Source: Octopus sinensis
Taxonomy: Eukaryota
DNA: 50,999 nucleotides
NCBI RefSeq assembly: GCF_006345805.1
Contig: NW_021834972.1
Span: 1 to 50,999, forward strand
Direction: 5' to 3'
Both the position numbers and the translations under genes were made by a program. The notes under the pieces are model-generated. The model had not been told where the DNA came from. It searched no databases and was given only the letters and a program-made list of their open reading frames with translations. Below are positions 8,148-9,125 of the stretch, piece by piece; positions within the stretch are counted from its first letter, which is position 1; the number at the start of each line of letters is the position of its first letter.

Positions 8148-9125
8148 TTAAAGTCTGATAGAATCATACACAGGGTTAGTGGCTCCCCATGAATCTCTTT
8201 GTGAGTCATCTAGAAGCGGTGCATAAGCTATTTCATTGTTTTGTGGCAAAGGACTCTGCTGCGGCGATTCTTCATCTGTCGCTTGATCAGTATCTTCTTG
8301 GCCAAGTTGACTGCCATCGTTGTCAGCAACAACCCACGTCATTTCTTCATCATTTGGTTTATCTGAAGAATCGGAATGGTTATCGTCGTCATCGTTGTTG
8401 CCATCATTGTCAATATGGTCGACGTATGAAAGACCATCCGTCTGGTTATCGTCTTGGCCATCGCTGTCAGGTTTCAACAAATTGTCGTCATCAGCAAAAC
8501 TGACGCTATTATTCTTGCCTAAATCAGCAAATGTCATGGTTACTGGAACTTCTAAAGATTGTTGAGATGCTACATCTGTGTTTGCATCCGTATCTTCCTG
8601 AGTAGGAACGCTTTCCAAGGGATCAGGAGATGCCACCTCTGTGTTGTCAGGGATTCCCTCCATATCTTCCAGAGTAGGAACACTTTCCAAGTTGTCATAT
8701 ACTATAGTATGGATTGGAGGCTCTTCAGCTGGTAAAGAATCTCCAGCTGCGTTGTCGGGAATTCTTGGCTTAAGACTAGTATACAGGTTTTCATTTTCTA
8801 TTTTTTCAACAACGTCGCTTTTCAGGGGAGGCACCTGCGACTCACTGTCGTAGTCTTCTTTTGGAAGATCACCGCTCTCTAGTAAGCCTGATAAATTTGC
8901 AGCATTGTTTTCAATGCCGTTCATCTTGGAAGAATTCTTCGAAAGATTGTCGTACTCTGCGATGGCTGACGGCTTCGTCGCTAAGTTCGCCTCACTATCA
9001 CCGTCGTCGTTATCTCTTTGCTTTCGCCACCAACAATAACCCAAAATTATTACTACTATCAAAATTATTATTATGAACAGCAACACTCCGACGGCACCGA
9101 AAAACTCGCCATTTGAATAGGGATT
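8148..9125 (-). CDS. Terminal exon 2: transmembrane helix plus ~290-aa acidic cytoplasmic tail (325 aa)
   Basis: The 312-aa ORF extends in frame up to acceptor ttttttttctatatttttcag|AAT (phase 0). Starts NPYSNGEFFGAVGVLLFIIIILIVVIILGYCWWRKQR. Tail has IVYDNL and IAYAPL and ends NPVYDSIRL-stop. Confidence 0.85.
   Translation of the reverse strand, partial: NPYSNGEFFGAVGVLLFIIIILIVVIILGYCWWRKQRDNDDGDSEANLATKPSAIAEYDNLSKNSSKMNGIENNAANLSGLLESGDLPKEDYDSESQVPPLKSDVVEKIENENLYTSLKPRIPDNAAGDSLPAEEPPIHTIVYDNLESVPTLEDMEGIPDNTEVASPDPLESVPTQEDTDANTDVASQQSLEVPVTMTFADLGKNNSVSFADDDNLLKPDSDGQDDNQTDGLSYVDHIDNDGNNDDDDNHSDSSDKPNDEEMTWVVADNDGSQLGQEDTDQATDEESPQQSPLPQNNEIAYAPLLDDSQRDSWGATNPVYDSIRL

What the first reader, a model, noticed from the sequence alone, without database searches (positions are those of the whole stretch)
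8166..8705. Short tail carries two canonical ITIMs and a C-terminal NPVY
Seen: IVYDNL (8688-8705) and IAYAPL (8214-8231) fit the ITIM consensus (I/V/L/S)xYxx(L/V/I). NPVY (8166-8177) lies five residues from the end; AEYDNL and NLYTSL are further YxxL motifs. An internal 72-nt duplication (LESVPT(L/Q)ED..NT(E/D)VAS) starts right after the first ITIM. Established: ITIMs recruit SHP1/SHP2/SHIP, and NPxY binds PTB adaptors and drives endocytosis (NPVY is the LDL receptor signal). Inference: this is an inhibitory or endocytic isoform.
Basis: partly seen in the sequence, partly recalled or inferred. Interest (0 to 1): 0.7.

Follow-up and report, generated by a model that had tools for sequence, protein, structure and literature searches.

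The report
Alternative short tail of octopus cadherin
The flagged stretch is the cytoplasmic tail of an alternative last exon of an octopus cadherin-related adhesion gene; the tyrosine motifs are really there, but only some are conserved between octopus species, so an "inhibitory receptor" role is unproven and a trafficking or adaptor-docking tail is the more likely, fairly ordinary, reading.

Summary
OBSERVATION: confirmed. On the minus strand, IVYDNL (8688-8705), IAYAPL (8214-8231), NPVY (8166-8177, five residues from the stop), AEYDNL, NLYTSL and a real 72-nt tandem duplication are all present.

WHAT IT IS: a terminal exon (9125-8148) encoding a short stub, a TM helix and a 292-aa very acidic, predicted-disordered tail. 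Orthologous Octopus bimaculoides models show the gene has cadherin repeats and a Ser/Thr mucin-like stalk. Eight stalk exons lie at 29-45 kb in the window. There are two alternative TM+tail exons: a long one (19236-14785) and this one. A 5' splice site 39 nt into the long exon (TCG|gtagtt) joins to this exon in phase 0.

CONSERVATION across three octopods:
- I(A/G)YAPL, EYDx(L/I/V), NLYTx(L/F) and an acidic dileucine FADDxNLL are invariant.
- The Tyr of "ITIM 1" is Asn in O. bimaculoides, while its flanking V, D and L are invariant.
- NPxY is missing in the third species, and the duplication is lineage-specific.
- Tyrosines are not significantly better conserved than other residues.

VERDICT: the isoform idea is supported. 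The inhibitory/endocytic function is only partly supported; a sorting or adaptor-docking tail is most plausible. This is a new member of a known kind, of modest interest.

The parts
8148..9125 (-). Alternative last exon ('short tail' exon): 13-residue stub, TM helix, 292-aa tail, stop TAA 8148-8150. The acceptor tttttcag| is at 9127-9126, phase 0.
   Evidence: An orthologous exon exists in two other octopods. All 10 CDS indels against L001 are multiples of 3, and Ka/Ks is 0.44.
9027..9086 (-). Transmembrane helix VLLFIIIILIVVIILGYCWW, followed by basic RKQR (cytoplasmic side).
   Evidence: AlphaFold2 gives one confident helix, pLDDT 85-93 over residues 11-30. The sequence is shown.
8151..9026 (-). 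Cytoplasmic tail, 292 aa, 24% D+E, net charge -54, predicted disordered.
   Evidence: Composition. pLDDT is below 50 for 258 of 325 residues. No Pfam domain and no PDB relative.
8943..8960 (-). AEYDNL: Yxx(L/I/V), invariant as a motif (AEYDNL / AEYDSI / TEYDDV). Not an ITIM by consensus (A/T at -2).
8772..8789 (-). NLYTSL, inside the invariant block ENENLYT; the +3 residue is L/F/F.
8688..8705 (-). IVYDNL ('ITIM 1'): fits the consensus only in the window species. VVNDQL in O. bimaculoides, DVYDNL in the third species.
8556..8690 (-). Tandem duplication (copy 1 8690-8619, copy 2 8618-~8556) encoding LESVPT(L/Q)ED...NT(E/D)VAS. Present only in the window lineage.
   Evidence: 83% identity, about 9 sd above shuffles. 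A single copy in both relatives.
8475..8498 (-). FADDDNLL: acidic dileucine [DE]xxxL[LI], invariant in three species (FADD(D/N/S)NLL). It follows the invariant PVTMTFADLGK.
8184..8243 (-). Most conserved block, QNNEI(A/G)YAPLLDDSQRDSWG, containing IAYAPL ('ITIM 2', 8214-8231).
8166..8177 (-). NPVY, five residues from the C-terminus. NPQY in O. bimaculoides; replaced by SEN in the third species. The C-terminus (S/N)(I/A)RL is conserved.
7990..8147 (-). Conserved proximal 3'UTR: 84% identity to the orthologous contig, against 50% for the intron and 72% for the CDS.
   Evidence: No Rfam match and no unusual fold.
14785..19236 (-). Alternative 'long tail' exon: acceptor tttcag| at 19238-19237 (phase 0), stub FVPTTTTLGGAVS, TM1, 1443-aa low-complexity tail, stop TGA 14787-14785, AATAAA at 14731.
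   Evidence: 83% and 68% identical to O. bimaculoides A0A0L8HCL0.
19198..19236 (-). 39-nt stub used as a mini-exon. The internal 5' splice site TCG|gtagtt lies at 19198|19197 and joins to the short-tail exon at 9125.
   Evidence: Inferred from the junction ...PLGVPAS|EAYTTGEFFG in XP_014773486 and the window sequence. It has the same TCG|gta form as all eight stalk-exon donors.
29267..44813 (-). Array of eight 87-117-nt Ser/Thr-rich stalk exons, all phase 0-0: 44813-44721, 42818-42726, 38799-38698, 37987-37886, 35079-34963, 33149-33057, 30933-30844, 29353-29267.
   Evidence: tblastn with the stalk of XP_014773486; boundaries.

Best explanation
The flagged region is the cytoplasmic part of an alternative last exon (9125-8148, minus strand) of an octopod cadherin-related gene. 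The ectodomain is cadherin repeats (upstream of the window) followed by a mucin-like stalk encoded by an array of about 90-nt exons (29-45 kb). The gene can end in either of two unrelated TM+tail exons. If the first exon (19236-14785) is used whole, the product has TM1 and a 1443-aa low-complexity tail. If a weak 5' splice site 39 nt into that exon is used instead, TM1 and the long tail are removed as an intron, and the stub is joined in phase 0 to this exon, giving TM2 and a 292-aa acidic, disordered tail. That tail is a string of short conserved linear motifs separated by fast-evolving acidic linkers. Three or four are Yxx-hydrophobic motifs (one, I-x-Y-A-P-L, also fits the ITIM consensus). 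There is also an acidic dileucine, a conserved C-terminus and, in two of three species, an NPxY. SHOWN: the exon structure, coding constraint, orthology, motif presence and the conservation pattern. INFERRED: the most likely role of the tail swap is to change which cytosolic adaptors the protein meets. Chiefly these would be clathrin-adaptor sorting or endocytosis via Yxx-phi and dileucine signals, possibly with phosphotyrosine docking at the conserved IxYAPL. A dedicated ITIM-type inhibitory receptor is less likely.
For: Exon anatomy and splice phases. Orthologous isoform model joining cadherin + stalk + stub to this tail (O. bimaculoides XP_014773486; Pfam Cadherin E=7.8e-10). Stalk exons of the same gene lie in the window. 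Coding constraint: all CDS indels are multiples of 3, Ka/Ks 0.44, dS 0.68, intron only 50% identical. Conserved 3'UTR. Predicted disorder outside the TM helix. YxxL enrichment p=0.0017, not seen in the long tail. Invariant blocks include EYDx(L/I/V), ENENLYT, FADDxNLL and QNNEIxYAPLLDDSQRDSWG. The roles of Yxx-phi and [DE]xxxL[LI] as AP-complex signals are established knowledge, not tested here.
Against: There is no transcript evidence for the window species itself. The only short-tail models (XP_014773486.1/.2) start inside a cadherin repeat without a signal peptide, so they may be 5'-incomplete. The internal donor is weak (G at +4, T at +5). No canonical AATAAA lies within 780 nt of the stop. 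Tyrosines are not significantly better conserved than other residues (5/7 against 47% background, p=0.18), and equally conserved blocks carry no recognisable motif, so the true partners may be unrelated to the named motifs. Only three species could be compared.
Confidence: 0.55

Rival explanations
1. The short tail is an ITIM-bearing inhibitory isoform: Src-family kinases phosphorylate IAYAPL (and IVYDNL), which recruit an SHP-2/Corkscrew- or SHIP-type SH2 phosphatase that dampens signalling by the long-tail isoform or neighbouring receptors, as Draper-II does in flies.
For: Two consensus matches in the window (p=0.033). IxYAPL is invariant in three species within the best-conserved block. Invertebrate precedents exist: the Draper-II ITIM binds Corkscrew (PMC8092387, PMC9008705), and oyster CgNCAM1 has two ITIMs and interacts with SHIP2 (PMC11841013). 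The tail is predicted disordered and so accessible.
Against: The consensus is degenerate. The second 'ITIM' is not conserved: the Tyr is Asn in O. bimaculoides while the flanks are invariant, and -2 is Asp in the third species. So at most one ITIM is ancestral, whereas tandem-SH2 phosphatases are usually engaged best by paired motifs (established knowledge). There is no evidence of phosphorylation or of expression in signalling-relevant cells. The conservation of the IxYAPL block extends 13 residues beyond the motif (LLDDSQRDSWG), which points to a larger interface.
Confidence: 0.12
2. An NPxY/PTB-driven endocytic or engulfment-type tail. The C-terminal NPVY binds a PTB adaptor (Dab/ARH/Numb/Ced-6-like) and drives internalisation, as in the LDL receptor or Draper/CED-1.
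For: NPVY in the window and NPQY in O. bimaculoides, five residues from the C-terminus. NPxY together with YxxL is the Draper/CED-1/MEGF10 tail grammar (PMC8092387).
Against: It is absent in the third octopod (GMSENESIRL) even though the preceding DSWG block and the terminal SIRL are conserved. Position -5 is Ala, not the aromatic of FxNPxY. A single occurrence has chance p of about 0.05.
Confidence: 0.1
3. The motif matches are incidental. The conserved blocks are binding sites for lineage-specific or non-SH2/non-AP partners (for example cytoskeletal or PDZ scaffolds through the conserved (I/A)RL C-terminus), and the tyrosines are ordinary hydrophobic anchor residues.
For: Tyr conservation is not above background. 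The blocks without a named motif (SSKMNG, PVTMTFADLGK, EEMTWVVADNDG, TDGLSYV) are as conserved as the Tyr blocks. The tail has no relatives outside octopods among 1.84 billion representatives.
Against: The +3 hydrophobic residue co-varies conservatively with three invariant Tyr (L/I/V, L/F/F, L/L/L). YxxL enrichment is significant and is absent from the sister tail.
Confidence: 0.18
4. Not an alternative isoform. The exon is appended after the long tail, as in the older JGI model A0A0L8HCL0, which splices ...KNVSLK|EAYTTGEFFG. That gives a two-TM protein in which this 'tail' would be extracellular. Alternatively, it belongs to a separate gene.
For: P0003 has exactly this junction. A phase-0 AAG|gtcagc donor exists five codons before the long exon's stop in the window.
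Against: The later NCBI annotation gives the short tail as a separate isoform. The long exon keeps its own in-frame stop and an AATAAA 54 nt downstream. RKQR after TM2 fits a cytoplasmic tail. No upstream exons of another gene were found between 9126 and 14785.
Confidence: 0.05

Closest known systems
Draper-I / Draper-II (Drosophila; CED-1/MEGF10 family)
   Same: An invertebrate single-pass receptor whose alternative splicing changes the tyrosine-motif content of the tail. The tail grammar is NPxY plus YxxL. The Draper-II ITIM binds Corkscrew/SHP-2 (PMC8092387, PMC9008705).
   Different: Draper has an EMI/EGF ectodomain, not a cadherin one. Its isoforms differ by a small insertion in a shared tail, whereas here the whole TM + tail is swapped. 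Draper's motifs have been tested experimentally; these have not.
CEACAM1-L / CEACAM1-S (recalled from memory, not tested)
   Same: An adhesion molecule with long- and short-tail splice isoforms, one of which carries two ITIMs.
   Different: Ig superfamily. The ITIMs sit in the long tail, the TM is shared, and it is vertebrate only.
Mucin-like protocadherin CDHR5 and other cadherin-related proteins (recalled from memory; CDHR2 and CDH23 appear among the PDB hits)
   Same: Cadherin repeats followed by a Ser/Thr-rich mucin-like tandem-repeat stalk, one TM, a non-classical tail and splice isoforms.
   Different: No sequence similarity in the tail. No orthology shown. The octopus tail has no catenin-binding domain (no Pfam hit).
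Oyster CgNCAM1 (PMC11841013)
   Same: A molluscan adhesion-type receptor with two tail ITIMs, reported to interact with SHIP2.
   Different: Ig/FN3 ectodomain, studied in haemocytes. No homology to this tail.
LDL receptor FDNPVY internalisation signal (established knowledge)
   Same: The identical NPVY tetrapeptide in a cytoplasmic tail.
   Different: Here -5 is Ala, not Phe. The motif is at the extreme C-terminus and is not conserved in one of three octopods.

Membership tests
ITIM-bearing inhibitory receptor | Cytoplasmic (I/V/L/S)xYxx(L/V/I) sequence | tested here: met
   IVYDNL and IAYAPL lie in the tail C-terminal to the TM helix. Chance p=0.033 for two or more.
ITIM-bearing inhibitory receptor | Motif (Tyr, -2 and +3) conserved in orthologues: ITIM 2 (IAYAPL) | tested here: met
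   IAYAPL / IAYAPL / IGYAPL in three octopods.
ITIM-bearing inhibitory receptor | Motif (Tyr, -2 and +3) conserved in orthologues: ITIM 1 (IVYDNL) | tested here: not met
   VVNDQL in O. bimaculoides (Tyr lost; V, D and L invariant) and DVYDNL in the third species.
ITIM-bearing inhibitory receptor | Tyr phosphorylation and recruitment of SHP-1/2 or SHIP, with an inhibitory output | not testable with these tools
   Needs phosphopeptide pull-down and cell assays.
NPxY / PTB internalisation signal (LDLR type) | NPxY in the cytoplasmic tail | tested here: met
   NPVY 8166-8177; NPQY in O. bimaculoides.
NPxY / PTB internalisation signal (LDLR type) | Aromatic or hydrophobic residue at -5 (FxNPxY) | tested here: not met
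   The sequence is W-G-A-T-N-P-V-Y, so -5 is Ala. The defining feature is taken from established knowledge.
NPxY / PTB internalisation signal (LDLR type) | Conservation in orthologues | tested here: inconclusive
   Present in 2 of 3 species. Replaced by S-E-N with a 6-nt deletion in L001.
AP-complex sorting signals (Yxx-phi, [DE]xxxL[LI]) | Motif present in a disordered cytoplasmic tail and conserved | tested here: met
   EYDx(L/I/V), NLYTx(L/F), YAPL and DDxNLL are invariant as motifs. Tail pLDDT is below 50.
AP-complex sorting signals (Yxx-phi, [DE]xxxL[LI]) | Binding to AP-2 mu2 / sigma2-alpha and motif-dependent internalisation | not testable with these tools
   Needs binding and uptake assays.
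Cadherin superfamily | Extracellular cadherin repeats | tested here: inconclusive
   Not in the window. Present in the orthologous O. bimaculoides model that carries this tail (Pfam PF00028, E=7.8e-10; PDB hits to CELSR1, protocadherins, CDH23 and CDHR2).
Classical cadherin | Catenin-binding cytoplasmic domain | tested here: not met
   No Pfam domain in the tail. No PDB relative.
Alternative last exon (tail-swap isoform) | Own acceptor and stop; phase compatible with upstream donors | tested here: met
   Acceptors at 19237|19236 and 9126|9125, the internal donor at 19198|19197 and all stalk exons are phase 0.
Alternative last exon (tail-swap isoform) | Transcript evidence for both junctions | not testable with these tools
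   Only the NCBI isoform model in O. bimaculoides is available. No spliced contig was found for the window species.

The most novel reading that the evidence does not exclude
An octopod-specific cadherin-related receptor toggles, through an intra-exonic 5' splice site, between a very long tail and a short tail whose conserved IxYAPL is a true ITIM. That would be a Draper-II-like inhibitory switch operating on a cadherin in cephalopods, with lineage-specific gain and loss of extra Tyr motifs (IVYDNL, NPxY, the 72-nt duplication) tuning its strength.
Probability: 0.1. Interest if true: 0.55.

Novelty: new member of a known kind. Interest (0 to 1): 0.3.

Why it matters
If the tail swap is real and functional, it would be a clear case in a cephalopod of an adhesion molecule changing its whole membrane anchor and cytoplasmic adaptor code by alternative splicing. 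It would also give a small, testable set of conserved linear motifs (IxYAPL, EYDx-phi, ENENLYT, FADDxNLL) in a lineage where receptor signalling is almost unstudied. As it stands, it is a motif-level prediction on an uncharacterised gene that NCBI has already annotated as isoforms in O. bimaculoides. That makes it useful for annotation but not surprising.

Tried and rejected
- **Word-index protein searches.** They found only one Logan fragment or nothing. They missed the O. bimaculoides models that the exhaustive HMMER search found, so their negatives carry no weight.
- **Fetching the O. bimaculoides locus, or contigs or transcripts of the window species, by exact product.** Nothing is on record, so splice sites could not be compared at the DNA level in O. 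bimaculoides and the window species stays unidentified.
- **TRF.** It did not report the 72-nt duplication; a direct alignment did.
- **ITAM reading.** YAPL and YDSI are 13 residues apart and the second is not conserved. Rejected.
- **Exon-duplication origin of the two tails.** No similarity.
- **Structural or domain homology of the tail.** None in Pfam or PDB.
- **Rfam and folding of the conserved 3'UTR.** Nothing found.
- **Literature on the gene name and on the sequencing run.** Nothing found.
- **A hydrophobic ORF at 12869-13096, considered as a third TM exon.** It has no support from the orthologous models and is followed by acidic residues. Not pursued.

Full report
**1. What is in the sequence**

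The finding lies on the minus strand. A polypyrimidine tract and AG (tttttcag|AAT, 9127-9126|9125) open an exon that runs in one frame to TAA at 8148-8150. Its 325-residue product has three parts:
- a 13-residue stub (NPYSNGEFFGAVG);
- a hydrophobic helix (VLLFIIIILIVVIILGYCWW) followed by RKQR;
- a 292-residue tail that is 24% Asp+Glu, with net charge -54.

The 72-nt duplication is real. Copy 1 is 8690-8619 and copy 2 starts at 8618. The copies are 83% identical with one 9-nt indel, and the alignment score is about 9 sd above shuffles. TRF missed it. It starts at the Leu codon that ends IVYDNL.

**2. Is it more than chance?**

I ran 200,000 shuffles of the tail:

| Test | Result |
|---|---|
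| Two or more ITIM-consensus matches | p=0.033 (0.31 expected) |
| One or more NPxY | p=0.048 |
| Five of seven Tyr with L/I/V at +3 | p=0.0017 |

The sister long tail has 32 Tyr but only one ITIM-like match (1.3 expected) and no NPxY. So the YxxL enrichment is a genuine property of this tail. The individual ITIM and NPxY matches are only marginally unusual, and these tests are post hoc.

**3. What gene is this?**

The window is eukaryotic and repeat-rich. Word-index protein searches were uninformative. An exhaustive HMMER search of 1.84 billion representatives found exactly three relatives:
- P0001, a Logan genomic contig product from runs SRR11869390 and SRR11869384, 58-60% identical;
- P0002, from Octopus bimaculoides, 67% identical: XP_014773486 'serine-rich adhesin for platelets-like isoform X5/X6';
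- P0003, also from O. bimaculoides: A0A0L8HCL0, an older JGI model.

The window therefore comes from another octopod, which I could not identify.

P0002/P0004 consist of cadherin repeats (Pfam PF00028, E=7.8e-10), then about 30-residue Ser/Thr-rich mucin-like repeats, then '...LIPSSTTPLGVPAS|EAYTTGEFFGAVG...', which is the orthologue of this TM + tail. The cadherin part gives generic PDB hits to CELSR1, protocadherins, CDH23 and CDHR2.

tblastn places eight stalk exons of this gene in the window at 29.3-44.8 kb. All are phase 0-0 with almost identical splice contexts, tgtag|CCAAC...ACTTCG|gtacat. No cadherin exon is in the window, so those exons lie upstream of 50999.

**4. The two tails**

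A second large exon (19236-14785) also begins in phase 0 behind tttcag. It encodes FVPTTTTLGGAVS, another TM helix and a 1443-residue low-complexity tail. It has its own stop and an AATAAA 54 nt downstream. It is 83% and 68% identical to P0003. It has no Pfam domain and no similarity to the short tail.

In XP_014773486 the peptide equivalent to the first 13-14 residues of this exon is joined directly to the short-tail exon. In the window that corresponds to a 5' splice site TCG|gtagtt at 19198|19197. This donor has the same TCG|gta form as the stalk-exon donors. Using it removes TM1 + long tail and installs TM2 + short tail in frame.

The older model P0003 instead splices the end of the long tail (KNVSLK|) to the short exon, giving a two-TM protein. 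A matching AAG|gtcagc exists in the window. I regard this as a probable model artefact, but I cannot exclude it.

**5. Is the exon a real coding exon?**

Against the orthologous genomic contig L001:
- the intron is 50% identical, the CDS 72% and the first 158 nt of the 3'UTR 84%;
- all ten CDS indels are multiples of three;
- Ka/Ks is 0.44 (dS 0.68), with marked block-to-block variation.

AlphaFold2 on the three-species alignment gives a confident TM helix (pLDDT 85-93) and pLDDT below 50 for 258 residues. The tail is therefore probably disordered. No PDB or Pfam relative exists.

**6.

Three species are compared:

| Motif | Window | O. bimaculoides | Third octopod |
|---|---|---|---|
| AEYDNL | AEYDNL | AEYDSI | TEYDDV |
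| EDY | EDYDSE | EDYDSV | EDYGSV |
| NLYTSL | NLYTSL | NLYTTF | NLYTSF |
| ITIM 1 | IVYDNL | VVNDQL | DVYDNL |
| LSYVDH | LSYVDH | LSYVEH | LSYVDH |
| ITIM 2 | IAYAPL | IAYAPL | IGYAPL |
| NPxY | NPVYDSI | NPQYENA | SEN-ESI |

- ITIM 2 is conserved and sits in the best-conserved block of the tail (QNNEIxYAPLLDDSQRDSWG).
V, D and L are invariant, but the Tyr is Asn in O. bimaculoides, and -2 is Asp in the third species.
- NPxY is present in two of three species. It also lacks the -5 aromatic of the LDLR signal.
- The duplication is specific to the window lineage.
- Five of seven Tyr are invariant against 47% of all tail positions. This is not significant (p=0.18).

Blocks without any named motif are equally conserved: SSKMNG, PVTMTFADLGK, TDGLSYV and EEMTWVVADNDG. 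I also noticed an invariant acidic dileucine, FADD(D/N/S)NLL, which fits [DE]xxxL[LI], and a conserved (S/N)(I/A)RL C-terminus.

**7. Mechanism**

*Shown:* an alternative TM + tail exon under coding constraint, carrying a conserved set of short linear motifs in a disordered acidic tail.

*Inferred:* the tail swap changes which adaptors the protein engages. The conserved set is three Yxx-hydrophobic motifs, an acidic dileucine and acidic clusters. This is the grammar of clathrin-adaptor sorting and endocytosis signals (established knowledge), so I rank a trafficking or adaptor-docking role first.

A single conserved ITIM-like IxYAPL keeps the inhibitory model alive. Invertebrate precedents exist: Draper-II and Corkscrew (PMC8092387, PMC9008705), and oyster CgNCAM1 and SHIP2 (PMC11841013). 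But one degenerate motif, embedded in a longer conserved interface, is weak evidence. NPxY-driven uptake is weakened by the motif's absence from one species.

**8. Comparison and novelty**

In function it resembles tail-swap isoforms such as Draper-I/II or CEACAM1-L/S. In architecture it resembles mucin-like cadherin-related proteins such as CDHR5. Both of the latter comparisons are from memory.

It is not a classical cadherin, because it has no catenin-binding domain.

The isoform already exists as an NCBI prediction in O. bimaculoides, and no paper discusses the gene. I rate it a new member of a known kind, with interest 0.3.

**9. Caveats**

- Only three species could be compared.
- There is no transcript evidence for the window species.
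- The short-tail NCBI models start within a cadherin repeat, without a signal peptide.
- The internal donor is weak.
- No canonical poly(A) signal lies within about 780 nt of the stop.

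Noticed in passing
window 7990-8147 (minus strand): The proximal 3'UTR of the short-tail exon is 84% identical to the orthologous contig of a species whose CDS is only 72% identical and whose intron is about 50% identical (dS 0.68). It is therefore under stronger constraint than much of the coding sequence. There is no Rfam match and no unusual fold, so it is presumably a regulatory (miRNA or RNA-binding-protein) target region.
   Followed up: partly
window ~9190-9300 (minus strand); L001 1-160: A long (TAC)n microsatellite sits just upstream of the short-exon acceptor, in the same position in the orthologous contig L001. 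L001 also carries a tandem duplication of about 63 nt covering the acceptor plus the first 29 nt of the exon.
   Followed up: no
window 29267-44813 (minus strand): The mucin-like stalk is encoded by an array of eight exons of about 90-117 nt, all phase 0-0 with nearly identical splice sites, embedded in repeated intron units. This implies tandem exon-intron duplication and probably variable copy number or cassette splicing. Exon types alternate (PTGLTPSSSA...TPGQNQ and PTGPST...VTLGENQ).
   Followed up: partly
window 14785-19236 (minus strand): The long-tail exon contains long homopolymer tracts (poly-Thr/Ala, poly-Pro, poly-Asp, poly-His, poly-Gln) yet is 83% identical to O. bimaculoides over its first 790 residues. 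The older JGI model A0A0L8HCL0 fuses it to the short-tail exon and begins with a repeat-derived segment that matches window 27116-27003.
   Followed up: partly
window 36558-37279 (minus-strand frames): A tandem array of about six 115-nt units, each giving the same 33-residue open frame (CPRLRIHATLERNPLCHQHSWVMS.RDTTNNGP), lies inside an intron of the gene.
   Followed up: no
window ~9430-9700, 27210-27580, 34090-34390, 39685-40130, 50170-50570: Multiple copies, in both orientations, of a SINE-like dispersed repeat. They share translated strings such as CPRCHAVGLNPEPCGW and LTKNKSWGRFARLKAVLQHG.
   Followed up: no
window 1-2031 (plus strand): A GC-richer segment (44% against about 30% elsewhere) with overlapping long ORFs, including a 240-aa frame at 1312-2031. 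It may be a retroelement fragment. Not analysed.
   Followed up: no
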